Assembly (NCBI GenBank): GCA_002269645.1 | Contig: NIVC01001659.1 | Location: forward strand, 1 to 64,000 | DNA: 64,000 nucleotides | Reading direction: 5' to 3' | From: Macrostomum lignano | Taxonomy: Eukaryota | Shown: positions 1 through 37,892 of the stretch, piece after piece | How the letters are laid out: every line of letters starts with the position of its first letter | Position numbering within the stretch: the first letter of the stretch is position 1 | The notes under the pieces: model-generated | Told to the model about the DNA's origin: nothing | The model's database searches: none | Seen by the model: the letters and a program-made list of their open reading frames with translations, nothing else | Translations under genes and position numbers: made by a program

Positions 1-345
1 CCCATGATAAAGCAGGGTGAGGGAGGTTGCTGTGCCCATGATAAAGCAGGGTGAGGGAGGTTGCTGTGCCATGATAAGGCAGTGAGGGAGGTTGCTGTGG
101 CCCATGATAAAGCAGGGTGAGGGGTTGCTGTGCCATGATAAAGCAGGGTGAGGGAGGTTGCTGTGGCCCATGATAAAGCAGAGTGAGGGAGGTTGCTGTG
201 CCCATGATAAAGCAGGGTGAGGTTTGCTGTGCCCATGATAAAGCAGGGTGAGGTTGCTGTGCCCATGATAAAGCAGGGTGAGGGAGGTTGCTGTGCCCAT
301 GATAAAGCAGGGTGAGGTTTGCTGTGCCCATGATAAAGCAGGGTA
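1..345. repeat. Minisatellite, ~35-38 bp unit (CCCATGATAAAGCAGGGTGAGGGAGGTTGCTGTG), probably intronic upstream of the GST exon
   Basis: About 10 imperfect tandem copies are directly visible from base 1. Confidence 0.9.
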
Positions 346-568
346 AAGCATGATATAAATTAATTTAAGTTATCCCAAAGTTTACACTATTGTTTACCAA
401 AGTCTTAAGTTAAATAGAGAGGAGTTTTGTAGAGGTAAATTCTGTATTCTGTTGGATGCACGGCGGGTGCTGGCATCTCTTACTGCACTTTTACAAGGCG
501 ACAGTAGAGCTGCAGCTGCAGCACTGAGGCTACTTCGGACTGATGTTGGCCGATATTTCACCTCCCAG

Positions 569-1088
569 GCGACTTCGAGCTGGGCCAGACGGCCACCATC
601 TGCCGCTACCTGGCCGAGAGGCTCGGCCTGCTGCCGATGGCGAGCCGGACCGCTGGCGGGCCGACCAGACCTGCGCCACCGTCATGGACTTCATCACGGA
701 GGGCCGGCTGGCCTTCCACGGCCGCAACTTCTACGAGTCGTACTTCGACCAGGAGGCGGAGACGCGGCCCTACATTGACTATTTTGAGCGGCACCGGCTG
801 CCCAAGTTCCTGCGCCACTTCGAGCAGGTGCTCAGCTTCAACGCGGCCAACTGGGACGCTTCTGGCGGCGGCCGGTTTGTCGTTGGCCGGCGGGTGACTT
901 ACTGCGACCTCTGCCTGCTGCACGTGCTGCGTGCTGCGGAGTCGCAGTTTCCGGCCGCCTGGGCCCGCAGCATCGGCGACTGTCCGAGGCTGGCCGAGTT
1001 CAAGGCCGGAATGGAGGACCGGCCGAGAGTTCGCGACTACCTGAGCTCGGCCAGGTGCAAGCCGTTTGAGGGAACAGCATGATGTGAT
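569..1088 (+). CDS. Last exon of a glutathione S-transferase-like gene, with two apparent 1-bp deletions (assembly error or pseudogene)
   Basis: Acceptor CTCCCAG|GC at 568/569. It reads GDFELGQTATICRYLAERLGLLP (GST N-domain end), shifts frame at ~635 to DGEPDRWRADQ...LPKFLRHFEQVL...GRRVTYCDLCLLHVL...PRVRDYLSSARCKPFEG (GST C-domain with the conserved T/S-x-x-D N-cap). A second shift at ~1072 would give FEGNSMM*. AATAAA at 1220-1225. Confidence 0.8.
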
Positions 1089-1424
1089 GGGGCCGGGCCA
1101 TCGGTACACTGCAGATGGATCATCGCTATAGACTACAGGCGTTCGATCTTTACTGCATTAATTTGCTCGTAGTTTTAATGCAATGAAGTGCAGCTTCTTG
1201 GTGATGGTGCTTTGTAACAAATAAAGGCAAGTTCGGTTGCTCAAATACTTGAATATTAGCGAATGTGAACATTAAAAGCATTTGATTGCTTGAAATTCAC
1301 CGAATTTCAGTTTCCTGATCACATGAAGTACAGCATCAAGATTGCTTCTTTATCGGGAATTGTTGGACCGCATTCGGCACTGAAGAGTTGGAACGAAGTC
1401 TAACTGAGCTTCTGGGTGCTACCG

Positions 1425-1890
1425 ACACCGCTCCTGACCTCCTTCAGTGGGCACCACCGCTCGTTCCTGACCTCCTTCAGTGGGCACCACCGCTCCCGAT
1501 CTCCTTCAGTGGGCATCACCGCTCCCGACCTCCTTCAGTGGGCATCACCGCTTCTGACCTCCTTCAGTGGGCCCACCGCTCCCGACCTCCTTCAGTGGGC
1601 ATCACCGCTTCTGACCTCCTTCAGTGGGCCCACCGCTCCCGACCTCCTTCAGTGGGCATCACCGCTCCCGACCTCCTTCAGTGGGCATCACCGCTCCCGA
1701 TCTCCTTCAGTGGGCATCACCGCTCCCGACCTCCTTCAGTGGGCATCACCGCTCCCGATCTCCTTCAGTGGCATCACCGCTCCCGATCTCCTTCAGTGGG
1801 CATCACCGCTTCTGACCTCCTTCAGTGGGCACCACCGCTCCTGACCTCCTTCAGTGGGCATCACCGCTTCTGACCTCCTTCAGTGGGCAC
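1425..1890. repeat. Minisatellite, ~29 bp unit (CCGCTCCCGACCTCCTTCAGTGGGCATCA)
   Basis: Visible tandem copies; they account for ORFs 1388-1873 and 1416-1844. Confidence 0.9.
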
Positions 1891-2392
1891 CAACACAAGC
1901 CTCAGCCTACAACGCTAGTCTTGTTCATACGCCAATGTGCGTTTCAAGCAAGACCCAGAAGGAATATATTGTGCACTAAAATGAAGTCAAGCAGACGCAC
2001 ATTGTCAGTCACTGTTTGTCATAAATTCCTCATGTTTTTATTTATTAATTATGTCTCCTTGAATTATGATCCATATTTATTTGAAAACATTCAACTAGAA
2101 TTATTTCCATCAAATTTTAATTGATAAGATCAGGGAAAAATCATGACGAACTTACAGGTAAAATTAGCACTTGGGATCATCTGTTGACTAAATTTCGTAT
2201 AGCGCGTTTGCAAAAGAAATTACTGGGAGTTTTTCTAGCCTTTTTGTGGTTTTTGTGGGGATTTTGCTGTCTAAGGACAGCATGCTTACACAGACTCAAG
2301 ATTTGGAGCTTTTGTTAATGCTGCTGTCTATGCGTGAGCAGTCTCTGATGGCGCTTGCTGTCTTTTGGCCAATAAGGATGAACTTGGCATGC

Positions 2393-3106
2393 TCAATGAT
2401 GATGTCCGTCGTGCATGCGATGGTCATGTCCATCGTGCAGATGATGGTCATGTCCGTCGTGCAGATGATGGTCATGTCCGTCGTGCAGATGATGGTCATG
2501 TCCGTCGTGCAGATGATGGTCATGTCCGTCGTGCAGATGATGGTCATGTCCGTCGTGCAGATGATGGTCATGTCCGTCGTGCAGATGATGGTCATGTCCG
2601 TCGTGCAGATGATGGTCATGTCCGTCGTGCGGATGATGGTCATGTCCGTCGTGCAGATGATGGTCATGTCCGTCGTGCAGATGATAGTCATGTCCGTCGT
2701 GCGGATGATGGTCATGTCCGTCATGCAGATGATGGTCATGTCCGTCATGCAGATGATGGTCATGTCCGTCGTGCAGATGATGGTCATGTCCGTCGTGCAG
2801 ATGATGGTCATGTCCGTCGTGCAGATGATGGTCATGTCCGTCGTGCAGATGATGGTCATGTCCGTCGTGCAGATGATGGTCATGTCCGTCGTGCAGATGA
2901 TGGTCATGTCCGTCGTGCAGATGATGGTCATGTCCGTCGTGCGGATGATGGTCATGTCCGTCATGCAGATGATGGTCATGTCCGTCTTGCCGGGTCCTCA
3001 GTTGATTCCTCAACAGCATTTCGCCAGCGCTGAGGGCCTCCGTGCTGACCGCCAGCGCTGCCAGGCTCGTCACAACGAATGTTAGGATTGCGATAGTCGA
3101 TGTCAT
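2393..3106 (-). CDS. Secreted His/Asp-rich repeat protein 1 (237 aa): signal peptide, LSAGEML motif, then 24 x DGHDHHLH
   Basis: ATG at 3106 begins a hydrophobic leader MTSTIAILTFVVTSLAALAVSTEA, in frame with a 24-nt repeat and ending at TGA 2395-2393. The leader aligns without gaps to the paralog at 5609-5974 (14/31 identical). Confidence 0.8.
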   Translation of the reverse strand: MTSTIAILTFVVTSLAALAVSTEALSAGEMLLRNQLRTRQDGHDHHLHDGHDHHPHDGHDHHLHDGHDHHLHDGHDHHLHDGHDHHLHDGHDHHLHDGHDHHLHDGHDHHLHDGHDHHLHDGHDHHLHDGHDHHPHDGHDYHLHDGHDHHLHDGHDHHPHDGHDHHLHDGHDHHLHDGHDHHLHDGHDHHLHDGHDHHLHDGHDHHLHDGHDHHLHDGHDHHLHDGHDHRMHDGHHH

Positions 3107-3595
3107 GCTGGCGGTTGATCGAGCTTGCTGGTACGATGCTGCAACTTGAGAGTATCTGCCCACCACTTGCTTTGGCTGTCGCTTGCTCACTAAACCTGAG
3201 AGGCTGCCCCAACCACCGCTCCGGCCTGTGGCCTCTTATGCTGTGTGCGGCAGTGACACTTTCGTCTGTGGCTGAAACCGTTGGCCTGTAGGCGCAATTT
3301 CTCAAGCTTAAGGCCTGAACTGTTATGCCGAGCGAAACTTTGGCCATAGACTATTATCTGCTTGTCCCAGCCCGCGTAGCTGAATCGCTGAATTCAGAAA
3401 AGTACAACGATTCAATATAGCTGGTAAGCATGCAAACAGTTTCGAAAAAGACTTTTTTGAGCGATCCATCTTGATCATTTAGTATCTGGGCCCGCTTGTA
3501 CTTTTAGTCAACATCAAGAATTCGCTTTTTTGTCATACTCGTAGATTTAAAGACTGGGTGGTTTTCCAAAAAATAGTGGCTAACAAATAAATCTG

Positions 3596-3860
3596 TCATT
3601 CTATCCACTGGTTCTTGCTTCTATCCACTGGTCTTTGCCTCTATCCACTGGTCCTTGCCTCTTATCCACTGTTCCTTGCCTCTATCCACTGGTCCTTACC
3701 TATATCCACTGGTCCTTACCTATATCCACTGGTCCTTACCTATATCCACTGGTCCTTATACCTATATCCACTGGTCCTTATACCTATATCCACTGGTCCT
3801 TATACCTATATCCACTGGTCCTTGCCTCTATCCACTGGTCTTTGCTTTTTCTATCCATAC
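3596..3860. repeat. Minisatellite, 20-22 bp unit (CTATCCACTGGTCCTTGCCT variants)
   Basis: Visible tandem copies. Confidence 0.9.
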
Positions 3861-3879
3861 AAGAACAACAAGAAAATGG

Positions 3880-5120
3880 GACAAAGCGCCGAGTGCGCGC
3901 CAGTCTTCGCCGGTAGGGTGCCTGCAGCGTCACCAGTAGCACCTGCATCACCGGCTGTGGGCAGTACCACTCAACGCGGATGATTTGGCCTGCCATGCAG
4001 ATTCGGCGATGGCACAAAAAGTTTGTCATGAATTTGTTTAATGAGGGACTGATTATTTCCTGATTTTTTATCTGCAGTCTTAACCTGAGCTGCAGGCGAA
4101 GCTAGCGTTTGACCTAAGCTGCGATATCATTGCACCGCAGGAGGTGTCTATCAAGGCTGACCTGGGACTTCACCATGAGGACCTGGGCGCTGGAGGGACT
4201 TTCGGGGCCGTATAGGAGTTGGAGCGCTGATCGAACCGAGACTGTCGCCTCGTCGTTCCGGCGACACTACAGCTGACGGGCGCAGAATGAGCTGCACGAA
4301 CTCTTCGCCGCGATCGTGAACGCGCTGACACTCCCGCTGCCAGACAATCCGACGCTGTCGGAGACACCGCCGGATACAGCCCGAGACGCCGTCGCCGGAA
4401 GAGGAGAGCTTTAGCATAGTCCCGGTAAGCACAGCCGACGTTTTGAGGCTTGCCCAATTGTCGCCGGGCAGGAAAGCGCTGGGTCCTGACGCTAGTTAAG
4501 TCGCCAGAGTAATGAACCGGCCGCGTGCTCTTCGGCGAGGATCGGCGCCCAACGAATGGACCACGGAATACATCGCAGCTATTCCTCAGAAGCCGCGCAT
4601 CACAACCTTGAGGAGTATCAGCTAGGGCATCTGCCTTCGGTCGTGGAGTAGTGGCGCAGATTCTGGCTTTTCGCTGAGGCATCGAAGAGGCGCGGATACG
4701 CTAGCAGATCCTGATGTTATCTTGGGGATTCGCAGATACAGATTCACAGATTTGTAGATTATGTATTCGTCGGTGGATAAGTACACGTGCTGCGCTCCCA
4801 ATAATGGTGCCAAATCAGCTGGTTTCCGCCATCATGGCGATGTGCTGTGACACGAAACTGCGTGTCAACACCGGAAGGCCAATCGAGACCGTTCTGCTTT
4901 ACAACGCCGAGGCTTCTGGACGCTGACAGCTGTAGACTGCTGTAGAGCTGTAGATCAAGCGGCGCACGCTGGCCTGCTACTCGTCGACTTCAAGATCGGC
5001 GACAAACGAGTTCCAACGCGTGCCCTGCACTGTATCATCGCACCGGCCCAGAGCGTCCAAGCGACCTGTTGTGCCATCGGCGACTCTAACTGGTTTTATG
5101 TTTCTGTCAATGGTCGTTCC
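3880..5120 (+). mobile_element. Degenerate, rearranged non-LTR retrotransposon (LINE; APE endonuclease and RT fragments)
   Basis: Fragments: ADDLA (RT YADD-like) at ~3976; DIIAPQEVSIKADLGLHHEDLGAG (APE endonuclease N-terminal QE motif) at 4123; VPNQLVSAIMAM at ~4805; ETVLLYNAE...AAHAGLL (post-RT region) at 4885. No continuous ORF. Confidence 0.7.
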
Positions 5121-5608
5121 TTCTATCAACTTATAACTAATCCTTTCCACCATCCCCAGCTCCATCAACAGTATTCAGGGCCTCGCGACTATGGCAATTT
5201 AAATATTATTTAAACGCAAGAACTGACACAGCATTTTTTTCTGATTTAAATTACAGATTTCTGATTTAATTTTCTCAATTTGCTTCAATTTTTTATTTAT
5301 TTCAAGTGCATCGATACCAGAATCAAAGCAAATAATTGGTTAGCTTCAACATGCACGACTGATTAGCAGTTTGATGTAATCATGCAACAGCGGACACTAG
5401 AATTGAAATAAAAGGCGGAAAGATGCTTAGATGAAGGTGCGATCAATATAGAGTTTTCTGTTGTGTTAGGATTATGATTTGTGTGTGGATAATTGGACTG
5501 ATTGGCTTACGCACAATAACAAGTGGATTAGAGGAAGCGGAATAAAACTTTGACATGCGAATGTCTTTCACGTTTCAGTCTTCTGGCTTGAATTCAGTGA
5601 CCACGATA

Positions 5609-5974
5609 TTAGTGATGCTGGTCGTCATGGTGGTGATGACCGTCATGATGATGGTGATGACCGTCATGATGATGGTGATGACCGACATGGTGGTGGTGAT
5701 GGTCGTCATGGTGATGGAGATGACCGTCATGGTGATGGTGATGACCGTCATGTTGGTGGTGATGGTCGTCGTGGTGGTGATAACCATCATAGTGGTGGCG
5801 ATGGCCTTCATGGTGGTGGTGATGACCGTCATGGTGGTGGTGATGGTCGTCATGGTGGTGGCCGTCATTGGCTAGTTCGAAGAGCATCTCGCCAGTACTG
5901 ATGGCGTCGGCCTTGGTCAGCAGGGCAGCGGCGCTCATCAGGCCGACTGCCAGAAGTGCGAAATACGAGCTCAT
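5609..5974 (-). CDS. Secreted His-rich repeat protein 2 (121 aa): signal peptide, ISTGEML motif, then ~13 degenerate DGHHHHH units
   Basis: Complete ORF from ATG 5974 to TAA 5611-5609. Leader MSSYFALLAVGLMSAAALLTKADA; 53 of the last 85 residues are His. Paralog of 2393-3106. Confidence 0.85.
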   Translation of the reverse strand: MSSYFALLAVGLMSAAALLTKADAISTGEMLFELANDGHHHDDHHHHHDGHHHHHEGHRHHYDGYHHHDDHHHQHDGHHHHHDGHLHHHDDHHHHHVGHHHHHDGHHHHHDGHHHHDDQHH

Positions 5975-6921
5975 TGCTGTAGCGGCGTTTCGGGTGGTCC
6001 TATGCCAGTGAAAAACGTGGTGCTCTCGTATCTAGCAGATTCGGAAATTAGCTCAAATGCTGCAGCTCTCACTTAAACTGCTGCGCTTGAGACTCAGCCC
6101 ATCGAACCTGTCTCCACAGTCCAGTTTTGTTTGTGTAAAAAACCCTGGCGTTGATGCCACAAATACGTCTATGGCAATGAAACGAAATTAACTAATGGCT
6201 TCTTTAAACAGATATTTGTTTTTTTCAATGTTTTTTCAATAGACTTTAAGAAGCAGCTCACCTGAGAACTGCTGATGTCCCCAATTGCTTAGTTGTATTA
6301 GATGTATGTACATTAGGCATGCAAAACCATTTGACAACAACAAACGCATGATTTGCTCATGAATTCGTACGCACTGTGCCAGTAAGCCAGATGGCCATTT
6401 ATGCACAGCTGAGTGTATTTTGCACACGCACCTTAAATACATAGAGTGGAGCTATGATGGGTGAATGATGATCATGTTCTGACTTTATCTTTCACTTAAT
6501 GACGAGGCTTTTCTCTAAATTTACTATATAAACCAGAATAATTGCATGGTTCTACAACAGTACCTGTGTGGGAAAATGACAACCATCAACTTAGCACAGC
6601 TGTATACAGTGTGCGTATTTTCAATTCACAAATATGAATTATTTGATAAATAATTATGAAGAATTTTCGCCATTTCGGGTAGCTACTGTATTCCTTATTT
6701 AATTATTTAGAGACAAGACAAGCCTCGAAGAATGAAATATAGCTCAAAAGAATCGGTAACATAGCTTCCATATTAGAAACTATAGAACACAGCAGTGAAA
6801 CGATAAATTTTCGTTCAAGAAACAGTTAGTTTTGAGCTTGGAAAAAGAAACAAGAAAAATTAAAAGTTTCAAACTGATTCTCACTGTTCTAGAATCGGGA
6901 ATAAGCCAATCCTGATAAGAT

Positions 6922-7028
6922 AACAATCAGAATCTGCTAGCGTATCCGCGCCTCTTCGATGACTTGACGAAAAGCCCGGATCTGCACCACTATACTCCAC
7001 GACATTAAGACAGTATAGGCAGATGCGC
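6922..7028 (-). mobile_element. Short inverted copy of the LINE-remnant segment at 4625-4715
   Basis: ATCAGAATCTGCTAGCGTATCCGCGCCTCTTCGATG...CTCCACGAC...GGCAGATGC matches the reverse complement of 4625-4715. Confidence 0.7.
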
Positions 7029-8698
7029 GCCCTGATAATCGTAGAAAATGAAAACATTTTGGTGGATTGTTTAGTATAGTAGGTAAACGGAGGGGAATAA
7101 TGGTAGACACTCGTGCGCTAACGCACAGCGATGGTTGAATGGATAAATAATTATATAATGGATATTATTATTTATCCATTAAAGTATAGTTACACACAAA
7201 GTATAGAGCGGTCACGTGCTGCGACCGCTGATTCTTTAGCATTGTTTTTCTGGATTGTTCTGCATAAAATGTGCAAACAACGATCGTCAAGTTGCTAAAC
7301 AAAACATTGCAATGCATAAAAATGTGAACAGCTATAGCTAAAAATGATCGTCAAGTTGCTAAACAATACATTGCAATGCATAAAAATGTGAATAGCTAGC
7401 TAATGATCGTCAAATTGCTCGAAAATGTATGAATAAAATCAAACACTTCATTCTCCAACATTTTTGAAACAATTGTCACCACATTTAAATTTTTTAAAAT
7501 CAAACAAAAATGAAAAACCAAGTCTGCTAATATACTTCTAGGCTTTCCAAAATTATAAGTAAAAGGTTTTAGGGCCTATCTATCTTTAAAAAATCATTCT
7601 TAAAATAAAATTATCAAAAAACGGAATTCAGTCAAATGCTGCTGCAGATTATGATCTTGGAATTCTTTGAATTCTTGTTAAAGGCATCAGAGGTCAGGAC
7701 ACATATTCTTTCCAATATATTTAATCCCCTTAGCATGTCATAATCTCTTAGGCTTAGCCGCGGCATAGGTACCTAATTCTGCAAAAGTTCTCACCAAGTT
7801 GGCAAATCGAAACAAAACAAAACTGAGTTGAAACCTATTCTATATCTTTTTACACATATCCCAACTACAGGCCTATGCGATCATACTCATACGTCATGAC
7901 TTAAAATATAGTAATAGAATGGCATGGGTGCAGTTGAATACGTCGTGCTACTTATTAAATAAATATCTGAGAAAACTCGTGGCGAGCTACCAATCTATTT
8001 GATATTTTACTAATCAGTCTTATTAAAGGTAGGCCTAGTAGGGTCAAGGTACTCGTACTCTAGGACTAGTGTTCCGCCGTAATTACGGATACGGTTACGG
8101 AAAACTACGGGGCGGGAACAAAACTGCCGTAATTTTGGTTACGGATTACGGTTATTGTTGAAAGGGGCAGTTACGGAACGACTACGGGATTACTGCCAGG
8201 AGGACGCTTTTCACGAATTTTGCCGGAACGTAATTGAATTTAAATTTTTTTAATACGAATTGTTGCATTTCTTTTTGCAAAGGTATAAAGTATAATATTC
8301 AAAAAATTAAATCTCTAAATTTTTTCCTGTCATGTTTAAAATGAAATACAAATTACCATGGTAGTTTGTTTAAATTGAAAAATAATGCTCGCATTTCAAA
8401 GTGACTTTGGGCCTTCCAATCCCTAATTACTCGATTGAATGAAGGCGATTCGTGAACGGCAACGGGAACGGGTGGTAAACCTGAAATGATTTATTGGATT
8501 GGGAATTAGCTATTAGATTTTTATAAACTTTAAATGTAAACTTTTTTGCTGTGTAGTTGGAGTTTTTAATTTTATACCCTATTTTTGTCTCGTTTTTGAG
8601 AAACAAGCACTCTATGATGTGATGTGTTTATGTTGCATATTGAAAATTAAATAGATATAAAATTGCCAGTTTTGAAGATCTCGACGATCTATGGGAAG

Positions 8699-9337
8699 AC
8701 CTGTATAACTTTCGCCGACACATCTTCAGACAGATCTTCCGACACTTTTTCGACACTTAAAATGTTGGAAAAAGTGTTGGAAAAAATGTCGTACCAGTTA
8801 ACTTTCACCGACACATCTTCAGACAGATCTTCTGACACTTTACGACACTTAAAATGTCGGAAAAAGTGTTGTAACAAAATTTTGAAGCAGTTGAAGAAAC
8901 AGTTCTTGTATCTTGTTCCATGAAGGGATCTTTAAAACAGGGAAACAGGGAAATGTTTCTCAAATCACAAACTTACATTTAATGGTTTGATCTACTATAT
9001 TTATCTGACTGAAGATTAATTTAAATGAATCTGTCATGTACTGCAGGCTGCTGCGTAGTGTGTACTTAACAAACATACATTACATGAATAGTAGGAGCTA
9101 CATGTACGTACATCACCTAGCTTTAAGAAGTGACATTTCAAGTGTTGGAAGATGTGTTGGCAGAATTTTAACCATACGACACTTTTTCAGACACTTTTTT
9201 GCAGTATTAATTTAAGTGTCGGAAAATATGTGTCAGCGAAGGTCAACTGTTACGACACTTTTTGCAACATTTTAAGTGTCGTAAAAAGTGTCGGAAGATC
9301 TATCTGAAAATGTGTCGGTGAAAGTTATAGTACAGGT
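8699..9337. mobile_element. Foldback/MITE element with long, internally repetitive TIRs and a 9-bp TSD (Mutator-like)
   Basis: Left end ACCTGTATAACTTTCGCCGACACATCTTCAGACAGATCTTCCGACAC is the reverse complement of the right end ...GTGTCGGAAGATCTATCTGAAAATGTGTCGGTGAAAGTTATAGTACAGGT. Flanks are TATGGGAAG (8690-8698) and TATGGAAAG (9338-9346). Confidence 0.8.
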
Positions 9338-9618
9338 TATGGAAAGGTAGTTTTTACATGTGGTACATGTTACGAATCTACATGTTTTTTTACATCATTT
9401 TCCTTACCATGTCTATTCCTAATTTTTGTTATATTACGGCTACAGTTACAGGAAACTAGGGGATTATAGAGAAGTGGGCACAAAATTGGCAGTAAAATAT
9501 AGGTACAGTTAGGCAACTTAATTTGTTATATGGCCAGAACTTTTGCATTGCTTGCACTTGCAAGTAGCTAATTATATGTTGCTAGAAAATATTTAGTAGG
9601 TAATGACAAATTGACAAC

Positions 9619-9820
9619 AAGGGATGGATCCAGAGAGGGAGAGCCAAGGGGTAGGGGGCCATGGCCATCATGGCCCCCGTCAGCTGCAGGCTGCAGCCAA
9701 AAAATTTGGTCATCTTTTGGCCTGCTACTATGCCAGGTCCCAGGTCTATTTTCTAATATGGGGTTGTAGTGCTTGGTATAGCTTGGCCCCCTCCTCAAAA
9801 ATTTTCTGGATCTGCACCTG
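9619..9820. mobile_element. Possible small MITE with GGATCCAGA...TCTGGATC ends
   Basis: AGGGATGGATCCAGAG at the left and TCTGGATCTGCACCTG at the right form an imperfect inverted repeat around a GC-richer island. TSD not identified. Confidence 0.4.
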
Positions 9821-10814
9821 ATGATAATAGGTTGGTTGTAATTTTGTATATAGTGTGTGAATGCCTTAAAAACGTATGCACTACACTCATTAACACTGTT
9901 CTCCCTTTAGGCTAGACAATCTATCAGAGCTAAAAATCCCTTATGATAATGAATTTTTTTCTAAAAAAAATTTTATTTCTGGCACAAATTTTCCTGAGTA
10001 TTGCAGTACATTAGACTTATGTCAGGGTTCTGGATAGTAGAGTAGTGTATACTAGAGCAAAAATCTTATTCTAAAGTTATAGTCCAGAAAATTATCAAAT
10101 AACTATAGTTTTCAGTGATAAAATTTTTTTAATATTTTTTTTATTTAATGTTGTTGATTTAATTGTGTAATTTTTTATCATTGACTCTTTCTTTAATACT
10201 AAATTTGTCTTAATTTTGCATAAAAATATCAATATTTTCATTATTCATATTAGTGTATTATGAGGTAGGCCTTATCTTAGCGATTGCTTGTTTCTTAGAA
10301 AGTAGTACGTTTTAAATTAGACTATTTTTGTTTTAATGCATATAATATTAGTAGTATTGTAAATATTATGAATATTATGAAATGTTATTTGTTTAAAATG
10401 AACTAAGAGGGGAGTATAAATACACGAGCTGAAACTGAAGGAGAGATACTTGCCTCGTTGCATGGCTTCAAAGCTTAAACTGTTCTAGTATCCTAAAATT
10501 GAAGCTTGATACTTATTGACTTAGTTATTTAGCAGCATTAGGATCCCCAAATTGGAAGAAACTTAGTCCGTTCTCAGAGAATGAGAAATCCTAGACTTAG
10601 AAGTCTAGTAACCCGCCTTTAGAAAGGCAGAAATCCTACCATAGGGTAGAGAAATCCAGGCTTAGAGTCTGAGAAACCCGCCTAAGGGCAGAATACCCAG
10701 CAAAGTGCGCTGTGACCCTCTGATCCCGGGAACGCCTAGGACTGAGAGAATAACATCTTTAGAGGAATATATAAGAATAGGATAGACAGTGCCTAAAAAG
10801 ACCGCTCAGGCCCG

Positions 10815-10950
10815 AAAGTGCAATAGAAGTACAGACGCTACCAATAAAAGTACATACAAAAGTGCAATAGAAGTACAGACGCTACCAATAAAAGTACATA
10901 CGAAAGTGCAATAGAAGTACAGACGCTACCAGTAAAAAGTACATGCGCTA
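10815..10950. repeat. Three tandem ~43 bp copies (AAAGTGCAATAGAAGTACAGACGCTACCAATAAAAGTACATAC)
   Basis: Directly visible. Confidence 0.8.
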
Positions 10951-12769
10951 CCAGTAAGTAAACAGTAAGAACAGTAAAAAGGATCACACCTGTAACAACT
11001 TTAGTGACAGCGGTAAAATCATTTGAAGGGACAGAAGTCACCCCTACAGCAACTTTGGTGGCAATAGTGGGATATTATTAATAGAGGCAGAAGTAAGCCC
11101 TACGTCAACTTTGGTGTCAGCGATTGAGATTCTTATAGGGAGCCAAAAGGCCTGTAACAATTACATAATAATATATTTTTAAATATAAAAATTTATATGT
11201 TATGCATTCCTAAATTTATATATTTTTTCTATGGCAAAACTTATAGGCCTCTGCTACTTGTATATCATAAAAATGGCAAAATATATATGCCAACTTTAAA
11301 AGAGTTCATTTATGAATTTTTTATTTACACTTAACCTTCTAGAGCCTAGGACCTTTGCAGAGCATAAAGCCTAAATTGCATGCCTAACACAATAAATTGG
11401 CTAGGATAAGCAAAGTGATAGCCATCTATGAATGCAGTATAAGCATTAGTAATGAGTGCTAGTAAACTTGTCAACTTTTTTGTCAACTGGCCTAGCTGTA
11501 TAGTAAATTTGTCAATTGGTAAATTCATCAACTAGTAAATTCCTCAACACAGTATGGTATGTACAGCTATCTCAGTGCACAGATAAAACAGAATAATAAA
11601 AACAATGAGCTGAGCCATGTTATTGTAATGCTGGTTTTTAGGCATAGGACATGTCAATTGTCAATTGTAACAATGCCTGCCTTTATTGTTGCCAGATAGG
11701 CAGATCGTCAATTGCTAGAATGTCTTTTTGCTAGATTGACTAGATAAGAGACAGCAGTGCATTGCAGCACCCAATAAGCTGCCATGTACAACATACTCAA
11801 ATATGAGATACAATAAAATTAAAAACAATGAAACCAATAATCTTCCATTTCAACAACTAGCTAGGGGACTGCAATTAATTGTTCCAGGATCCCAATCCTA
11901 ATCAATATTGATTTTTCAATCAAATTTTAATAAATGTGTTTAGCAAAAAATATTACTTAATCAACTTTTTATCCATATATAAATTAAAACCTTATTGTTT
12001 TTGCTTTGTTTGTATCTCTTACTTCTATACACTTCATTATATTGCATATCAGTTACACATTTTACAAACTGTGGTAAACAAATAAAAATTTGACAAGTTT
12101 ACCCAGAAAGGTAAAATTCCAAAGAACCTAGTATAATATTGCAGGCCTATAAAAAATTCAAAGAAAAGCATACATATTTGATAGTGTCAAATATACAGAA
12201 GTACAGTACTAAATCATTGATTAAAATTATTTATGTATAAAATTATCGATATATTGTTAGAAAAAAGTCTTCTTGCAAATAAAATAACACCAATGCTATT
12301 ATTATCTAAAAATTATAGAACAACCTTAATTAACATTCCTTATAGACATTGCAATTTTTTAATTATTGCCAAGTCATGAAAAAAACATTATTCTATATTC
12401 TTGTTATTTTATATTCTTATTAAACTGTGATACTTTCAAAGTATCTTTAAAGCATGACTATAAAAATCTTATTTCTTTATTCATCTTTAGCTAGGCCTAT
12501 TTTTTATACTTTTATTTATATTGTTTTTAGTTATTATAGTTGAAGCTTACATTAAAAAAGATAAGTTGAAATTTTTAATCCATTTGTTTTTTATTAGCAA
12601 TTTCAATTTTATTGTTTTTCCTATTTTTTAATTGCTATGCGAAATATTCTAGGCTTTAGTATGTATTATGAATATATAAAAATGCTGTAATATGGACTTT
12701 TTAATTTTGGTTCAAATACTGTCAAAATCAAATCTTTGCTTATAATCCCACTTATTGATCTTCATTGAT

Positions 12770-14594: not shown

Positions 14595-15320
14595 CTCGAT
14601 TCCCCCAAACCCATCTGAAGAATCTCCTGCATTCCCCTTGTGATTCCCTCAATTCCTCTTGAAGAATCTCCTGCATTCCCCTTGTGATTCCCTCAATTCC
14701 TCTTGAAGAATCTCCTGCATTCCCCTTGTGATTCCCCCAATTCCTCCTGAAGAATCTCCTGCATTCCCCTTGTGATTCCCCCAATTCCTCCTGAAGAATC
14801 TCCTGCATTCCCCTTGTGATTCCCCAATTCCTCTTGAAGAATCTCCTGCATTCCCCTTGTGATTCCCCCAATTTCTCTTGAAGAATCTCCTGGATTCCCC
14901 TTGTGATTTCCCCCAATTCCTCTTGAAGAATCTCCTGGATTCCCCTTGTGATTTCCCCCAATTCCTCAAGAAGAATCTCCTGGATTCCCCTTGTGATTCC
15001 CCCAATTCCTCCTGAAGAATCTCCTGCATTCCCCTTGTGATTCCCCCAATTCCTCCTGAAGAATCTCCTGGATTCCCCTTGTGATTCCCCCAATTCCTCC
15101 TGAAGAATCTCCTGCATTCCCCTTGTGATTCCCCCAATTCCTCCTGAAGAATCTCCTGGATTCCCCTTGTGATTCCCCCAATTCCTCCTGAAGAATCTCC
15201 TGCATTCCCCTTGTGATTCCCCAATTCCTCCTGAAGAATCTCCTGCATTCCCCTTGTGATTCCCCAATTCCTCCTGAAGAATCTCCTGCATTCCCCTTGT
15301 GATTCCCTCAATTCCTGCTG
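14595..15320. repeat. Minisatellite, ~44 bp unit (GATTCCCCCAATTCCTCCTGAAGAATCTCCTGCATTCCCCTTGT)
   Basis: About 16 visible copies just upstream of the NEMP ATG. Confidence 0.9.
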
Positions 15321-15446
15321 AAAAATGGTGCTAACACGGGAGTTTTATCAGTCTGCTTTAGCCGGCAGCCCTGCAGATATTCCCTTTCTGTTATCCATTG
15401 TTCATGCAATCCTCTGGCATTCCCTAGCAACAAAAGTTCATCCAGC

Positions 15447-17990
15447 ATGAATTGGCGGTGCCCGAATCCGCTGCTGCTGCTGCTGCTGTCGCTGCTGCTT
15501 TTTCATCGCCTCGACGGCACTCTGGCGGCTCAGCGCGATAGGCCGCTGATCTTCCAACTTGGCAGCCAGCCAATCACCATCAGGCGCGACTCGGTCTCGC
15601 TGGCTGGCGATTGGACACAGCGGCTCTGCGTGTTCTGCTCGCCCGGCCTGCCCGCCCACCCGCGCTTCGCCTTCCACGGCGCCTCGCTGCGCATCTCGCT
15701 GGCGTCGTCCAATTCGGCGGCGCCGCGCCTCTTCCTCGGGACGAACGAGAGCGATGTTACTGACCGGGTGCGGCAGGCCTCGGAGGCCTCGCTGTTCCAC
15801 CGGCTGCTCCTGCCGGCCGCCTTCCGTGACGGATTTTTCTGGGAGCCGCTGATGGCCGCTCGGCAGGCTTTTCTCGGCCCGCTGGCGCTGCCGCTGCCGC
15901 TGCTGGAGCCGTCCTGCGCCGGCGTGCTGATCGAAGGCAAGGAGGAGCCGCCGAGGGCCATCGGTGCGTCCGCAGCAGGGCCTGCCGCCCATGGTGCTGG
16001 GGATCTTGGCTGCAGGGATGAACCTGGGAAATTGATCCCCAATCTAGGGATACTGATCCCCAATCTAGGGATACTGATCCCCAATCTAGGGATACTGATC
16101 CCCAATCTAGGGATACTGATCCCCAATCTAGGGATACTGATCCCCAATCTAGGGATATTGATCCCCAATCTAGGGATTTCGATCTATACGACTATAAACA
16201 GTAGATATGAATCACTAATTTGAGGATTATCGATACCAAATATATGAATTTTACGCCTGAACTACCCGTAGAGATGTTACTCGTATTCCCTATTCGGGGA
16301 TACTAATCCCAGTCAGGGGATATTCCTCAATCTCCCCAACCCGGCACCGCAGCAGAAGGCGACGCCGCCGTCTACACTGTGCGCGCCGTCGCCGGCCTCA
16401 GCCTCGCCCGCCTTGCCGCATTCGTCATCGGCTGCGGCCTGCTGGCCTGGGCGCCCGAACTCAGCCGCCGGGCCACCTTCCACTACGCTGGCGGCGCCAT
16501 GGCCGGCGTCCTGCTGTCTGCGGCGCTCCTGGTGCTGCTGCTCAACCGCCTGCTGCCGCTGCGCCGCCTCTTTTGGCCGCTCTTCCTGGCCAGCGCTGCC
16601 GGCGCCGGCGCCATCTGGACTTTCGCCGCCGCGCACGCCGCCGAACTCGCCGAGCGGCACTGGACGACTCTGTCTGCCTACCTGGCCTGCTCTGCCGGCC
16701 TCTCCGTGGTCATCTGCTACTGGCTGGGGCCCGTCACCAGCCAGCGGACTTTCCGCCTGCTGGAGATCGCGCTGAGGGCCCTGGCGCTCCTCTGCATGCT
16801 GGCCTCCTGTCAGGTATGACCTCTGTCCGATTCCCACTACTGATCCCCTTCCACCTGCCTGATCCCCTTCCACCTGTCTGATCCCCTTCCACCTGCCTGA
16901 TCCCCTTCCACTTGCCTGATCCCCTTCCACCTGTCTGATCCCCTTCCACCTGTCTGATCCCCTTCCACCTGCCTGATCCCCTTCCACCTGCCTGATCCCC
17001 TTCCACCTGCTCGATTTCCGTTCTGACGCTTATCAGCTCCCCTCCGCCCTCAGTTCTGGCAGGTATCGGGGGTGGCAGCGGTGGCAATCCTGTTGCGCGG
17101 CTTCTTGACATCCGCCGTGTCGGCCGTCGCGAAGGTCTCGATGTTACGCCTGCGCTGGGCGCTGTGGCAGCGCCTAGAGTCGGCCTTCTGGCGCTGCTGC
17201 CCCCGCTGGTTGCGACCGCTGCACCGGCGGCGCTGGCTGACCGAGGAAGACTTCAGCAGGCAGGGCCGCGAGTGCACTGAGGTGGCGCTGGAGCAGCTGC
17301 GGCGGCACTGCGCCAGCCCCGACTGCGACGCCTGGCGGGTCAGCGCGCGCCTGCGGGACCCGGCCGGGTTCGCCCAGTTTGTGCAGGTGAGTGCTGTCAC
17401 TGCTGTGCCAATGAGGCCTGTGCACCTCCTCACACATGGATACGGCAGGCAAGCAGGCACGAGTATAAGTATAAAATCAATACTCGCAGAACAGCTGTGG
17501 GCACCGCGGAGCTACGGTGAGGCCATTCTGCGCTTCCGCATGCGCATTCCGAGCACATACAGGCACGCCAATACTGTACAGAGGCATGCACTCATACACA
17601 CGACAGCCCCACATAAATGTAGCTGCGCACGGAATTGAACCAGGGGCCTTTGCGCAAGAGTCTGACGCAGTTACCGCTGCGGATGCTCTGCCAAGTATTG
17701 CGGAGCTCACAGCTCAAACACCCGGCGCACTTCAGGGCGGCAGCCACCTGCAGTCGCTGCTGGACTCCACGGACCTGTCTTCGGACAGCGACAGTTCGAC
17801 CGTGGCCCCCGCCGCCACCACCTCTTCGCCGGCTCCCAACGGATGGAAGGCCACGCCCGGTTCGACGCGCGCCCCCGCAGTGAACGGCAACGGATGTGCA
17901 CGAGGCGCCCGCATGGCGCCGTCCGCGACTCAGATTCGGCAGAGGCGGCCAGTTCTGGACGACTCGGACGACGGCTCCCTCACTGACTGA
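15447..17990 (+). CDS. NEMP1: Nuclear envelope integral membrane protein (NEMP/TMEM194 family), 4 exons
   Basis: Exons 15447-15963, 16353-16813, 17054(or 17063)-17386 and 17736-17990, all GT-AG and phase-consistent. Signal peptide; TM block LSRRATFHYAGG...VICYWLGPVTSQRTFRLL; conserved RRWLTEEDFSRQGRECTEVALEQLRRHCASPDCDAWRVSARLRDPAGFAQFV|GGSHL. Confidence 0.9.
16030..16175. repeat. 21-bp minisatellite in NEMP intron 1 (GATCCCCAATCTAGGGATACT x ~7)
   Basis: Directly visible. Confidence 0.9.
16840..17010. repeat. 19-bp minisatellite in NEMP intron 2 (CTGATCCCCTTCCACCTGC)
   Basis: Directly visible. Confidence 0.9.
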
Positions 17991-35571: not shown

Positions 35572-37655
35572 TCACACAGGAGTGACACCTTTCACTGCCT
35601 TATTGTACTTAAAGAACAAAAAGCCCAGAGCGGCCCCGGTGAGGAGGTTCGTGGGCAGCAAAACGCCCAGAGTGATTGCCGCGGCCGTGTTGAAAACGAA
35701 GTTGCAGCTGGGGACCGGACCAATCGGTGGCCTTGTGCTGGGCTCAGGCGTAGCCGTTGTTGTGTCCGTGGTCGTGGTCGTGGCGGTGGTCGTGGTCGAG
35801 GTCGTTGTCGAGGTCATGGCCGTGGTGGTGGGAGAAGACTCAACCAGAGTGTTTACATAGTTAAGCGTTTGATCCCAGAAGCCGCAGTCGTCACGTCGGA
35901 AGCCATACGGCACGTTGTAGCTCGACGCAAAAGTTTCAAGGTCGATAGTGAAGTTGTGGTAGAACCGGTGGCTGCTGTTGTACTTGGCCCAGACTTCCTC
36001 CTCGTCCCTAGGCACGGGATCGCCCGTCTCAACAAACTTGGCCAGGTAGTCCATCATGCGGACAGACAGATCGGCCTGCTCGGGTTTTACGATCGGAGCA
36101 TCGTCGGTCGGGTTTCCGAAGAAGTAGTACGCGTCCGAGCCGTGAGAGGCGCCGATGTAGTTGGGTGTGTTGTCCTGCTCCGAGAACACGTAGAAGTAGA
36201 CGTCGTTCGACGTTCCCTGCATTAAAAAATAGTTCGAAAATGCTGCAATCATACACTGCTCAGAGTTGCATGACTAGTTAAAGCGATATTACAGATGCTA
36301 GATAAGCTCACCTGGTTCTTCTCGGACATCTTCTCGGCGAACTCGTTCGCAGCGCTCACGAAGAGCCGATCAGAGGCTCCATCCAGCCACCGCTTGTACT
36401 GCGCCGGTCCCGATGGGTTTCCGAAGTCCGTCAGTCGGTCGTACATCACATTCTGTCCAGTAACGCTCAGTAGGTCCGGTTGCCTCTCGTAGTACCTGAA
36501 CTGGTCCCGGAGAACTCTCTCATAAGTGGCCCTGTCAGCCAGCTGGTCCTGTGTGAGCTTCTGCGACTCCAGGCTGCGCTCAACATACACAGCAGCTTCT
36601 GCATTCGTCACTCCAATCATGAGACTCATCCCCTCAAAACGACCATTACGGAAGGCCTCAATGGGATCCTCCTTGATGTAGTCACCGTCGATGACTGGAG
36701 GAAACTCGACGCCCTGGAACAGACGGTTGTAGTTAAGCTGCTCGTTGACAAGCTTCTCGGGGGAAACCTCACGAAGGCACTGGATTGTGGCATTGAAGTC
36801 GCCCTGATCCGGAAGAGGGCAGCTGAGCTGACGGACGGCAAAGTCCAAGTGAAGCCTCTCTACTAGGCTGGTGTCGTTCCGCACCGACCAGAAGACCATC
36901 GGAGAGCCGCCCAGCATGACGGCTCGCTTGAAGTACGTCTTCGTATTGTCGTTCAGCATGTGGTACCCGACGGCTGCAGCTCCGGCGTCCAGACCCATCA
37001 GCGTCACCGTCTGCAGGTTTCCTCCGAACCTCTCGATGTTTTTATGCACGAACTCGAGTCCCAAGGCCTGATCCTTCAAGCCCATGTTTCCAGGCGCCAC
37101 GGTAGAGCTGAGTCGAAGAAAGCCGAGTACGCCAAGTCGGTACTGGAGACTCACGGTGACGATCGACTCGTGGGCTGTTAGAACGCGGCCCGAATTGATT
37201 TCTTCGATGATGGAGCCGGTCTCGAAGCGGCCTCCATGGATCCACACGAGCACTGGGTAGCTTCCGGGGTTCGAGGAGGTTCCGTTGTACGGCGTCCAGA
37301 TGTTGGCAGCGATGCAGCTCTCCGACATGGTCTGATAGTCTCCGCTCGCTCCGGGGTCTTGGTAGCACCTGCGGTCGAAATCGAGAACATCCTGGACGAA
37401 GTCCCACTTAGTGAAGACGGGGTGAGCAAATCGAAACTCTCCAGTGGGAACCTTGGCGAAGTTGATGCCCAAGAAGGAACCGATGTGTACCATTTTGTTG
37501 TCTCCAGATCCTTTTGTCTCAATTACGGCGCCTCTGATAGGGCCTTGGGTTGTGGTGACGTTAAGGTACCGCACGATGGTGAAGTTCCTCTGGGCAGAGA
37601 CCGCCGCGGCTGACAGAGCCAGCAGCAGCAGCAGGGTAGTGAGGGTCGATTCCAT
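35572..37655 (-). CDS. Cholinesterase-like (carboxylesterase type B fold) type I membrane protein, copy A, 662 aa; nucleophile Ser replaced by Asp; Thr-rich stalk, TM segment and PDZ-type tail
   Basis: Exons 37655-36312 and 36216-35572 (95-bp GT-AG intron). Motifs: signal peptide, FLGINFAKVPTGEFRF, SESCIAANIWTP, VWIHGGRF, YRLGVLGFL, GNMGLKDQALGLEFV, FGGN, TLMGLDAGA, PVIDG, GVTNAEA, GASHGSD, W-x-K-Y, CGFW, TM segment, KYNKAVKGVTPV*. Confidence 0.92.
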
Positions 37656-37892
37656 GGCCAGTCTGTGTGGTGTGAGAGGTCTCTGGATCAGCTCCGCGGC
37701 CTCTGGCTCGGGCGAACGCTGCTAATATTTCTGCGCTGATTAGATACTGTAAGTTTGTTTTTAGTAACCAAGGCAACTAGAATTTTAACTTTTATTGATA
37801 AGGCCTTAGTAGACATATTGGTCTTCGCTCAGAGGCGCATTTGGTTTCACAAAAATTACTTTTGGAAACGCCACTCAATACCAGCAATTTCG
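37656..37892. promoter_or_regulatory. 237-bp spacer between divergent start codons (candidate bidirectional promoter or 5' leader region)
   Basis: Position between ATG 37655 (-) and ATG 37893 (+); no motif verified. Confidence 0.45.

What the first reader, a model, noticed from the sequence alone, without database searches (positions are those of the whole stretch)
2393..5974. Tandem pair of secreted poly-His/Asp proteins with a conserved A[L/I]S[A/T]GEML motif: candidate new metal-binding or biomaterial protein family
Seen in sequence: two intronless minus-strand ORFs 2.5 kb apart. Each has a ~24-aa signal-peptide-like leader. The leaders align without gaps (14/31 identical, GEML at positions 28-31 in both), and almost all of the remainder is His/Asp/Gly (50% His in copy 1; 53 His in 85 aa in copy 2). 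Conservation of the leader at protein level, while the repeat DNA differs, argues these are real genes and not satellite ORFs. Established knowledge: secreted His-rich proteins harden or adhere through Zn/Cu coordination (Nereis jaw Nvjp-1, squid beak His-rich proteins, mussel byssus) or sequester metal/heme (Plasmodium HRP2, Helicobacter Hpn). Inference: these could be structural metal-crosslinked proteins of a gland secretion or sclerotised part (for example stylet, rhabdite or eggshell), or metal-detoxifying/antimicrobial peptides.
Basis: partly seen in the sequence, partly recalled or inferred. Interest (0 to 1): 0.85.

Follow-up and report, generated by a model that had tools for sequence, protein, structure and literature searches.

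The report
Unannotated secreted histidine-rich flatworm gene pair
Two neighbouring, so far unannotated genes of the flatworm Macrostomum lignano appear to encode small secreted proteins that are about half histidine; they belong to a tiny species-restricted family that probably binds metal ions and flips charge with pH, but whether they are expressed, and in which tissue, could not be tested here.

Summary
Minus-strand ORFs 2393-3106 (237 aa) and 5609-5974 (121 aa) each have a hydrophobic leader followed by a His/Asp/Gly array. The leaders are homologous (14/31 identical, shuffle p about 5e-6). The arrays use different DNA units (24 bp and 21 bp).

The genome is Macrostomum lignano. The family has three gene types: t1 (DGHDHHLH)n, t2, and t3. 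Each is present in 3-6 near-identical assembly copies, and the t2-t1 order is kept in the four loci inspected.

No annotated protein, Pfam family, PDB chain or any of 1.84 billion representative proteins is related. This is an orphan family, missing from the public M. lignano proteomes.

Evidence for real minus-strand genes:
- t1/t2 homology is limited to the leader.
- A shared upstream motif lies at -89 and -104.
- Poly(A) signals cluster about 270-350 nt after both stops.
- Other minisatellites in this repeat-dense window lack such leaders.

The homeologous copies are too similar for dN/dS, and no RNA data could be reached. The mature proteins are predicted to be disordered, with pI about 6 and a charge from about +28 (pH 5.5) to -47 (pH 8.1). 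Best reading: secreted metal-binding, pH-switchable polyampholytes, a new member of a known compositional kind. Tissue and role remain unknown.

The parts
2393..3106 (-). t1 gene (ORF1), 237 aa: leader, a short linker (LLRNQLRTRQ), then (DGHDHHLH) x about 24, ending HDGHHH-stop
   Evidence: Copies with 100% identical leaders lie on C151, C1368, C581 and C1315.
3044..3106 (-). t1 signal-peptide-like leader, residues 1-21 (MTSTIAILTFVVTSLAALAVS). It has an uncharged hydrophobic core of about 16 residues and -3/-1 rule cleavage candidates AVS|TE or TEA|LS.
   Evidence: crude rule-based tests; SignalP was not available
3014..3037 (-). conserved motif ALSAGEML (t1 residues 24-31), predicted to lie at or near the mature N-terminus
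2402..2990 (-). 24-bp tandem array, 24.5 copies, 96% identity. It encodes DGHDHHLH in the frame that continues from the leader.
3185..3195 (-). upstream motif GTTTAGTGAG, 89 nt before the t1 ATG and shared with t2. Candidate core-promoter or 5'-UTR element.
   Evidence: only 3 matches on both strands of the 64-kb window, two of them here. The roughly 0.04 expected by chance is my own arithmetic, not a tool output.
2037..2121 (-). cluster of AATAAA/ATTAAA signals 272-356 nt after the t1 stop. Candidate poly(A) site.
5609..5974 (-). t2 gene (ORF2), 121 aa: leader, then an irregular D[G/D]HHHHH array, ending DDQHH-stop
   Evidence: Copies lie on C151, C1368, C581, C1315 and C4195.
5909..5974 (-). 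t2 signal-peptide-like leader, residues 1-22 (MSSYFALLAVGLMSAAALLTKA). Cleavage candidate TKA|DA.
   Evidence: AlphaFold2 models residues 2-36 as one helix.
5882..5905 (-). conserved motif AISTGEML (t2 residues 24-31)
5628..5861 (-). 21-bp tandem array, about 11 copies, 82% identity. The units are 15, 18 or 21 nt long, always a multiple of three. His codons are CAT 27 and CAC 26.
6067..6078 (-). upstream motif GTTTAAGTGAG, 104 nt before the t2 ATG. It is conserved in t2 and t3 copies.
5265..5301 (-). cluster of AATAAA signals 308-344 nt after the t2 stop, conserved in all t2/t3 copies. Candidate poly(A) site.

Best explanation
The two ORFs are real, paralogous, single-exon genes of Macrostomum lignano, transcribed from the minus strand. 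They belong to a three-member, lineage-restricted family (t1, t2, t3).

Inferred route: each product enters the secretory pathway through a cleavable N-terminal signal peptide of about 21-22 residues. That leaves a short conserved N-terminal motif (A[L/I]S[A/T]GEML) on an otherwise disordered His/Asp(/Gly) polymer with no Cys and no Lys.

Inferred mechanism, from composition and from established chemistry of His/Asp clusters: the dense imidazole and carboxylate side chains bind divalent transition metals (Zn2+, Cu2+, Ni2+) reversibly and at high capacity. Because the pI is about 6, the chain is a polycation at secretory-granule pH and a polyanion in sea water. The proteins would therefore serve one of two purposes. 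They could act as a metal- and pH-switchable packaging or cross-linking component of a gland secretion, or as a secreted metal buffer.

Shown here: the anatomy, the paralogy, the absence of relatives, and the predicted disorder and charge curve. Inferred: secretion, metal binding and the physiological role. Unknown: the tissue.
For: Gene status:
- The leaders are homologous (14/31, p about 5e-6), while the flanks are not alignable. DNA homology between t1 and t2 is limited to ATG..GEML.
- The two arrays are built from different units (24 and 21 bp). Both encode His/Asp/Gly in the frame set by the leader ATG.
- A third type, t3, has the same layout.
- The t2-then-t1 order is kept in the four loci inspected in full: the window, C1368, C581 and C1315. 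C151 carries a 100% identical copy of the window's pair.
- The motif GTTTA(A)GTGAG sits 89 and 104 nt upstream of the two ATGs.
- AATAAA/ATTAAA signals cluster 270-350 nt after both stops on the minus strand. On the plus strand, the matching 600-nt stretches hold only one such signal in total.
- Upstream of the ATGs the paralogous copies differ by indels of 1, 2, 5, 7 and 10 nt. Inside the leader coding sequence the only indel is 3 nt.
- Of 20 arrays tested in this window (period a multiple of three), only one other has an upstream ATG with a signal-like hydrophobic leader.

Secretion:
- Only 6 of 120 ORFs of at least 60 aa in the window pass a crude signal-peptide filter. These are the two His ORFs, the two carboxylesterases, which carry textbook-looking leaders, and two others.
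- -3/-1 rule cleavage sites are present.

Disorder and charge:
- AlphaFold2 gives a helix at residues 2-36 and then no structure, with block-mean pLDDT of about 42-56.
- pI is 6.0-6.3. Net charge of mature t1 is +28 at pH 5.5 and -47 at pH 8.1.

Metal binding by analogy:
- The only database proteins that score are compositional look-alikes. One is a 509-aa protein with an (EPDGHHH)n insertion, which I recognise from memory as resembling the nickel-insertion protein LarC.
Against: - No transcript or protein evidence could be reached. The genes are absent from both public M. lignano proteomes in every frame.
- The homeologous copies are 93-98% identical across coding and non-coding DNA alike, so they give no power to show purifying selection.
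- Leader dN/dS between t1 and t2 is only about 0.7.
- One antisense frame, Val/Met-rich, is also open through the arrays.
- Several copies carry frame-breaking changes: a 5-nt deletion in the C1315 t1 copy, a shared 1-nt deletion in the C1368 and C581 t2 copies, and a TAG in the C4195 leader. These are either decay or long-read indel errors.
- The n-region of both leaders has no positive charge.
- Any poly-His chain binds metal in vitro, so metal binding would not by itself establish function.
Confidence: 0.45

Rival explanations
1. There is no gene. The arrays are two of the many minisatellites of this genome, and the ORFs with leaders are fortuitous or are relics of a dead gene.
For: - The window holds more than 40 tandem arrays, many with periods that are multiples of three and open in several frames.
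- No annotation exists in any frame.
- Some copies are frame-broken.
- There is no selection signal among the homeologs.
Against: - Leader homology has p about 5e-6.
- It persists after the flanks have diverged beyond alignment.
- Two different repeat units give the same amino-acid composition in the leader's frame.
- A third type has the same layout.
- The upstream motif and the poly(A) clusters are shared.
- Other arrays lack leaders.
Confidence: 0.15
2. The proteins are structural precursors that are covalently or metal-cross-linked into a hardened product, such as the eggshell formed from shell granules or another sclerotised secretion. His would act as the nucleophile for quinone tanning or as the Zn/Cu cross-link site, as in Nereis jaws and squid beak.
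For: - His content is very high, and the layout is secretory.
- In Schistosoma japonicum, a transcript annotated 'histidine-rich glycoprotein precursor' is among the most female-biased genes, listed alongside eggshell-synthesis proteins and tyrosinases (PMC4851400).
- Array length varies between copies, as is common in structural repeat proteins.
Against: - The mature chains have almost no Tyr and no Lys or Cys, so they could only be acceptors, never DOPA donors.
- 19-25% acidic residues and a net charge of about -47 in sea water favour solubility.
- There is no sequence similarity to any flatworm eggshell protein among 1.84 billion representatives.
- The stylet forms inside cells (my recollection, not checked here).
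Confidence: 0.15
3. The proteins are secreted antimicrobial or nutritional-immunity peptides that starve or kill microbes through Zn/Cu chelation or Zn-dependent activity. Histatin, clavanin, microplusin and calprotectin work this way.
For: They are small, secreted, His-rich, lineage-specific, tandemly duplicated and variable in length. These traits are typical of immune effectors (general knowledge).
Against: - They are anionic in sea water, whereas most membrane-active peptides are cationic.
- No amphipathic mature region is predicted.
- No expression or induction data are available.
Confidence: 0.1
4. The proteins are the unidentified negatively charged releasing factor of the duo-gland adhesive organ, displacing the Lys/Arg-rich cohesive protein Mlig-ap1.
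For: - Published work predicts a secreted, negatively charged releasing molecule of unknown identity (PMC6410801; PMC9229212).
- Mature t1 would carry about -47 charges at sea-water pH.
Against: - The same study found attachment and release unaffected between pH 4 and pH 10. A His/Asp polymer would be strongly cationic at pH 4-5.
- The authors favour a small molecule.
- There is no evidence of expression in the tail.
Confidence: 0.03

Closest known systems
Plasmodium falciparum histidine-rich proteins HRP2/HRP3 (my own knowledge)
   Same: A hydrophobic N-terminal signal is followed by almost nothing but short tandem His/Asp-containing repeats. They are exported, bind Zn2+ and haem, exist as paralogous copies, and vary in array length between copies.
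   Different: Their repeats are Ala-rich (AHHAHHAAD), with about 34% His. They carry an export motif and have a two-exon structure. They are not homologous: no hit. The flatworm repeats are DGHDHHLH and D[G/D]HHHHH, with 45-54% His in the mature chain.
Helicobacter pylori Hpn / Hpn-2 nickel-storage proteins (my own knowledge)
   Same: About half of all residues are His. They are small, disordered and bind metal at high capacity.
   Different: Hpn is cytosolic, has no leader, contains Cys pairs and Gln/Glu, and is bacterial. There is no sequence relationship.
Nereis jaw protein Nvjp-1, squid-beak His-rich proteins, mussel mfp-4 (mfp-4 as the His-rich plaque-thread link: PMC12817120; the rest is my own knowledge)
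   Same: They are secreted His-rich repeat proteins whose function rests on Zn/Cu coordination and pH-triggered assembly. mfp-4 also combines His-rich and Asp-rich repeats.
   Different: They are dominated by Gly/Ala (Nvjp-1, beak proteins) or carry Tyr/DOPA, Lys and Arg. The flatworm proteins have only 4-12% Gly, almost no Tyr and are strongly acidic above pH 6.5.
Vertebrate histidine-rich glycoprotein (GHHPH repeats) and sarcoplasmic histidine-rich Ca-binding protein HRC (my own knowledge)
   Same: Signal peptide plus tandem His-rich, or His plus acidic, repeats that act as Zn2+/pH sensors or as low-affinity, high-capacity cation buffers in a secretory or luminal compartment.
   Different: In those proteins the His-rich region is one module of a large multidomain protein (cystatin-like domains, Cys-rich tail). 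Here the array is essentially the whole mature protein.
His/Asp-rich metal-handling loops of bacterial proteins (ZnuA loop, HypB/SlyD tails, LarC insertions)
   Same: The local sequence is nearly the same as the flatworm repeat. P0003 carries (EPDGHHH)n inside a protein that I recognise as LarC-like. These loops capture Ni/Zn.
   Different: They are loops or tails attached to folded enzymes or binding proteins, not free-standing secreted polymers. The similarity is compositional only.

Membership tests
Secreted histidine-rich repeat proteins (a compositional and functional class, not a homology family) | N-terminal cleavable signal peptide | tested here: inconclusive
   Each leader has an uncharged hydrophobic core of 15-16 residues, and -3/-1 rule sites are present. 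Both pass a crude filter that 6 of 120 window ORFs pass, including two carboxylesterases with clear leaders. No SignalP run or experiment was possible, and the n-region has no positive charge.
Secreted histidine-rich repeat proteins (a compositional and functional class, not a homology family) | His above about 25% of the mature chain, arranged in short tandem repeats | tested here: met
   45% (t1), 54% (t2) and 48% (t3) of the predicted mature chains. The repeats are 8 residues and about 7 residues long.
Secreted histidine-rich repeat proteins (a compositional and functional class, not a homology family) | Intrinsic disorder of the repeat region | tested here: met
   AlphaFold2 on the single sequence shows no secondary structure after residue 36, with block-mean pLDDT of about 42-56. 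This is a prediction only.
Secreted histidine-rich repeat proteins (a compositional and functional class, not a homology family) | Binding of divalent metal or haem by the native protein | not testable with these tools
   Needs ITC or ICP-MS on recombinant and native protein.
Plasmodium HRP2/HRP3 | AHH-based repeats (AHHAHHAAD / AHHAAD) and detectable sequence similarity | tested here: not met
   The repeats here are DGHDHHLH and D[G/D]HHHHH. phmmer against 1.84 billion representatives gave five compositional hits. None of the five sequences has AHH-type repeats, and the library carries no names.
Hpn-type cytosolic Ni-storage proteins | No signal peptide; Cys pairs within the His runs | tested here: not met
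   A hydrophobic leader is present and the sequences contain no Cys.
Gly/His-rich jaw and beak proteins (Nvjp-1, HBPs) | Gly (+Ala) is the dominant partner of His; Asp is low | tested here: not met
   Gly is 4-12% and Asp+Glu is 19-25%.
Any Pfam family or solved structure | Significant profile or sequence match | tested here: not met
   Pfam gave nothing for t1. For t2 it gave one hit at E 0.26, far below the cutoff. The PDB gave nothing for t1 and one compositional hit for t2 at E 0.0045, a carbonic anhydrase.

The most novel reading that the evidence does not exclude
The family is a charge-reversing 'granule switch'. It would be polycationic at granule pH, where it condenses an anionic cargo, with or without Zn2+. 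On exocytosis into pH-8 sea water it would turn polyanionic within milliseconds, driving the explosive swelling or release of a flatworm secretion (rhabdite mucus, adhesive or releasing-gland content). The conserved GEML motif would serve as the granule-sorting signal. This would be a protein-encoded pH trigger for reversible secretions, and possibly the missing component of the duo-gland release mechanism.
Probability: 0.07. Interest if true: 0.8.

Novelty: new member of a known kind. Interest (0 to 1): 0.4.

Why it matters
If expressed, these are among the most His-dense animal proteins known to me: 45-54% of the predicted mature chain. They are also missing from the annotation of a widely used flatworm model.

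They would add a genetically tractable example to the small set of His-rich proteins that inspire metal-cross-linked and pH-responsive biomaterials, because M. lignano supports RNAi, in situ hybridisation and transgenesis. They could also mark an uncharacterised gland secretion or a metal-handling route in flatworms.

The case also shows how genes built on minisatellites escape annotation in repeat-rich genomes. As it stands, it is a well-supported gene prediction with an inferred chemistry, not a new mechanism.

Tried and rejected
1. Looking for relatives, all negative:
- Exact look-up of both ORFs and three paralogs.
- Exact look-up of five alternative or antisense ORFs across the two arrays and three neighbouring ORFs.
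- Leader-only word searches of 5.8 billion proteins.
- Full phmmer of t2 against 1.84 billion representatives, which returned only compositional hits.
- Pfam and the PDB.
- The control worked. The neighbouring carboxylesterase retrieves M. lignano proteins from NCBI and UniRef at 95% identity, so the species is in the database and these genes are simply not annotated.

2. Purifying selection among homeologous copies. This was abandoned because the loci are 93-98% identical throughout. Leader dN/dS between t1 and t2 is 0.69 and uninformative.

3. Frame test. The His frame is stop-free from GEML to the end in the window, C1315 and C3354 copies. One antisense frame is stop-free too, so this does not settle the strand.

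4. Profile search of the own genome with the leader alignment.

5. Other His-rich loci suggested (C939, C4133, C587, C558, C1222). None has a His-rich ORF with a leader. Only C4195 is a family member.

6. Literature:
- No paper in the library links Macrostomum with a His-rich protein.
- The peptide strings occur in no relevant paper.
- The supplements of the seminal-fluid screen and of the adhesion paper contain no matching sequence.

7. Release-factor idea. Considered and marked down because adhesion and release are insensitive to pH 4-10.

8. RNA families and tRNAs in the window: none found.
Full report
**What is there**

On the minus strand, ORF1 (2393..3106, 237 aa) reads MTSTIAILTFVVTSLAALAVSTEALSAGEML-LRNQLRTRQ-(DGHDHHLH)x~24-DGHHH. 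ORF2 (5609..5974, 121 aa) reads MSSYFALLAVGLMSAAALLTKADAISTGEML-FELAN-(D[G/D]HHHHH)x~12. Tandem Repeats Finder gives a 24-bp unit with 24.5 copies at 96% identity for ORF1. For ORF2 it gives a 21-bp unit with about 11 copies at 82% identity. His counts are 97 of 237 and 53 of 121.

**Organism and genomic setting**

The assembly is 764 Mb in 5,269 contigs. A 34-nt spliced-leader sequence that I recalled for Macrostomum lignano matches exactly at 44 sites. With up to two mismatches it matches at 138 sites, often in regularly spaced arrays, and the reversed control matches nowhere. Independently, a carboxylesterase ORF in the window is 95% identical to NCBI 'BOX15_Mlig008387g1 [Macrostomum lignano]'. 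That protein lies on a contig of 862,727 bp, the length of C151. The window is therefore M. lignano.

The window is packed with minisatellites: more than 40 arrays with periods of 4-111 bp. The null hypothesis of an 'ORF across a satellite' has to be taken seriously.

**Is it more than a satellite ORF?**

- **Leader homology.** The two leaders are homologous. Shuffles give a mean of 4.7 identities and reach 14 in about 5e-6 of trials, or 1e-5 when the hydrophobic core and the tail are shuffled separately.
- **Homology limited to the leader.** At the DNA level, the only alignable stretch between the two genes and their 400-bp upstream regions runs from a few bases before the ATG to just past GEML. 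The duplication is therefore old (leader dS about 0.63). The leader and the His/Asp composition survived, while the flanks and the repeat units diverged.
- **Shared upstream motif.** GTTTA(A)GTGAG lies 89 and 104 nt upstream of the two ATGs. It occurs only three times on both strands of the window.
- **Poly(A) signals.** Three or four AATAAA/ATTAAA signals cluster 270-350 nt after each stop on the minus strand. The corresponding plus-strand positions have one and none. The clusters are conserved in the paralogous copies.
- **Indel pattern.** Among paralogous copies, indels upstream of the ATG are 1, 2, 5, 7 and 10 nt long. The only indel inside a leader coding sequence is 3 nt. Unit lengths in the t2 array are 15, 18 or 21 nt.
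- **Control arrays.** Of 20 arrays in the window whose period is a multiple of three, only the two His arrays and one other (16026-16177) have an in-frame ATG with a signal-like hydrophobic leader in front. Most have no upstream ATG at all.
- **Signal-peptide filter.** A crude filter is passed by 6 of 120 ORFs of at least 60 aa. These are the two His ORFs, the two carboxylesterases (MASALTTLLLLLALSAAAVSA|QRN) and two others.

**Family census in the genome**

- **t1** lies on C1659 (the window), C151 (100% identical to the window), C1368 (about 20 units), C581 (only about 4 units, still in frame) and C1315 (a 5-nt deletion at the first unit causes a frameshift).
- **t2** lies on C1659, C151, C1315, C1368 and C581, and C4195. 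The C1368 and C581 copies share a 1-nt deletion that replaces roughly the last 20 residues with RRSSSLS. The C4195 copy has a TAG in the leader and a longer array.
- **t3** is 105 aa, has GKML in place of GEML, and is 87% identical to t2 in the leader. It lies on C3354, C1503 and C2908, without a t1 partner in the C3354 and C1503 stretches that were read.
- Sources.

The loci are colinear and 89-98% identical over both coding and non-coding DNA. That fits the recent genome duplication and uncollapsed haplotypes known for this species (my knowledge). It also means these copies cannot show purifying selection.

The frame-breaking differences are either decay or long-read indel errors. I cannot tell which.

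**No relatives and no annotation**

- Exact look-ups of both ORFs, three paralogs, the alternative or antisense ORFs over the arrays, and three neighbouring ORFs find nothing.
- Word searches with the leaders find nothing.
- phmmer of t2 against 1.84 billion representatives gives five hits at E of 1e-3 or better. All are compositional. One is a protein with an (EPDGHHH)n insertion that I recognise as LarC-like.
- Pfam and the PDB give nothing meaningful.
- The M. lignano proteomes are in the database, as one search shows. The family is therefore unannotated and, as far as these libraries reach, restricted to this lineage.

**Properties of the predicted products**

The leaders have uncharged hydrophobic cores of 15-16 residues and good -3/-1 sites (AVS|TE; TKA|DA). 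Cleavage there would put the conserved A[L/I]S[A/T]GEML motif at residues 3-10 of the mature chain.

AlphaFold2 models residues 2-36 of t2 as a single helix and the rest as unstructured, with block-mean pLDDT of about 42-56.

The mature chains are 45-54% His and 19-25% Asp+Glu. They have no Cys, no Lys after the leader, and almost no Tyr. Calculated pI is 6.0-6.3. Mature t1 goes from about +28 at pH 5.5 to about -47 at pH 8.1, and t2 from +23 to -18.

**How it most likely works**

The chemistry of dense His/Asp clusters is well established: reversible, high-capacity coordination of Zn2+, Cu2+ and Ni2+, and titration near pH 6. Examples are HRP2, Hpn, the HRG His-Pro region, mfp-4, Nvjp-1, and the ZnuA, HypB and LarC loops (my knowledge; mfp-4 also).

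I therefore read the family as secreted, disordered metal-binding polyampholytes whose charge reverses between an acidic granule and sea water. That suits one of two roles: a packaging or cross-linking component of a gland secretion, or a secreted metal buffer. The conserved N-terminal motif could be a sorting or docking element.

The tissue-specific roles remain rivals: eggshell or other hardened product, antimicrobial or nutritional immunity, seminal fluid, and the adhesive release factor.
- **Eggshell.** A flatworm precedent exists: a 'histidine-rich glycoprotein precursor' among the top female-biased S. japonicum genes, listed next to eggshell proteins and tyrosinases. There is no sequence similarity, however, and the strong negative charge and the lack of Tyr and Lys argue for a soluble partner more than a matrix protein.
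- **Release factor.** A secreted negative releasing molecule is predicted for M. lignano. But adhesion and release work from pH 4 to pH 10, which a His-based switch would not tolerate.

**Verdict**

- The gene-family interpretation is well supported by sequence logic but lacks any expression evidence.
- The functional interpretation is a reasonable inference and remains untested.
- This is a new, unannotated member of a known compositional kind (secreted or metal-handling His-rich repeat proteins). It is not a member of any known homology family.
- Interest is moderate, at 0.4.

Noticed in passing
window 36249-37721 (-) and 37740-39302 (+): A head-to-head pair of carboxylesterase (PF00135) genes with nearly identical signal peptides (M[AE]S[AT]LTTLLLLLALSAAAVSA|QRNF). 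One is 95% identical to M. lignano BOX15_Mlig008387g1. This was used to identify the organism.
   Followed up: partly
window 15303-16223 (+), array 16026-16177: A 306-aa open frame that starts with a Leu-rich signal-like leader (MNWRCPNPLLLLLLSLLLF...) and runs into a 21-bp array encoding (GILIPNL)n. It is the only other minisatellite in the window with a leader in front, so it is possibly another unannotated secreted repeat protein. The exact sequence is not in the protein collection.
   Followed up: no
whole window: Extreme minisatellite density. There are more than 40 arrays with periods of 4-111 bp, and GC swings from 33% to 65% in 2-kb windows. Many long 'ORFs' in all frames are by-products of the repeats.
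   Followed up: partly
G000:C151:778000-788000 (L021) vs window 1-12000: C151 carries a copy of the gene pair that is 100% identical to the window, including array lengths. This is probably redundancy in the assembly and not a separate locus.
   Followed up: partly
L024 (C1315) t1; L022/L023 (C1368/C581) t2; L041 (C4195) t2: Frame-breaking differences in some copies: a 5-nt deletion at the first t1 repeat, a shared 1-nt deletion near the 3' end of t2, and a TAG in the leader of a copy with a much longer array. The C581 t1 copy has only about 4 repeat units. These are either real decay or contraction, or long-read assembly errors.
   Followed up: partly
window 58286-59599 (+): An open frame whose first 150 residues match methylenetetrahydrofolate reductase (PF02219, E 7e-35). 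It then runs into a 16-bp tandem array (58759-59517). This is probably an MTHFR exon followed by an intronic or flanking satellite.
   Followed up: no
G000: C1214, C3830, C4525, C4853 and others: Exact copies of the 34-nt spliced-leader sequence recur at spacings of roughly 11-25 kb on several contigs. This looks like tandem arrays of SL RNA genes.
   Followed up: no
P0003 (509 aa, library protein): A protein that I recognise as LarC-like carries an insertion of about ten EPDGHHH repeats. This is nearly the flatworm repeat and a convergent His/Asp/Gly metal-capture module.
   Followed up: no
window 3602-3840: A 20-bp minisatellite (11.6 copies) lies between the two genes. It is present, with varying copy number, in the paralogous loci.
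   Followed up: no
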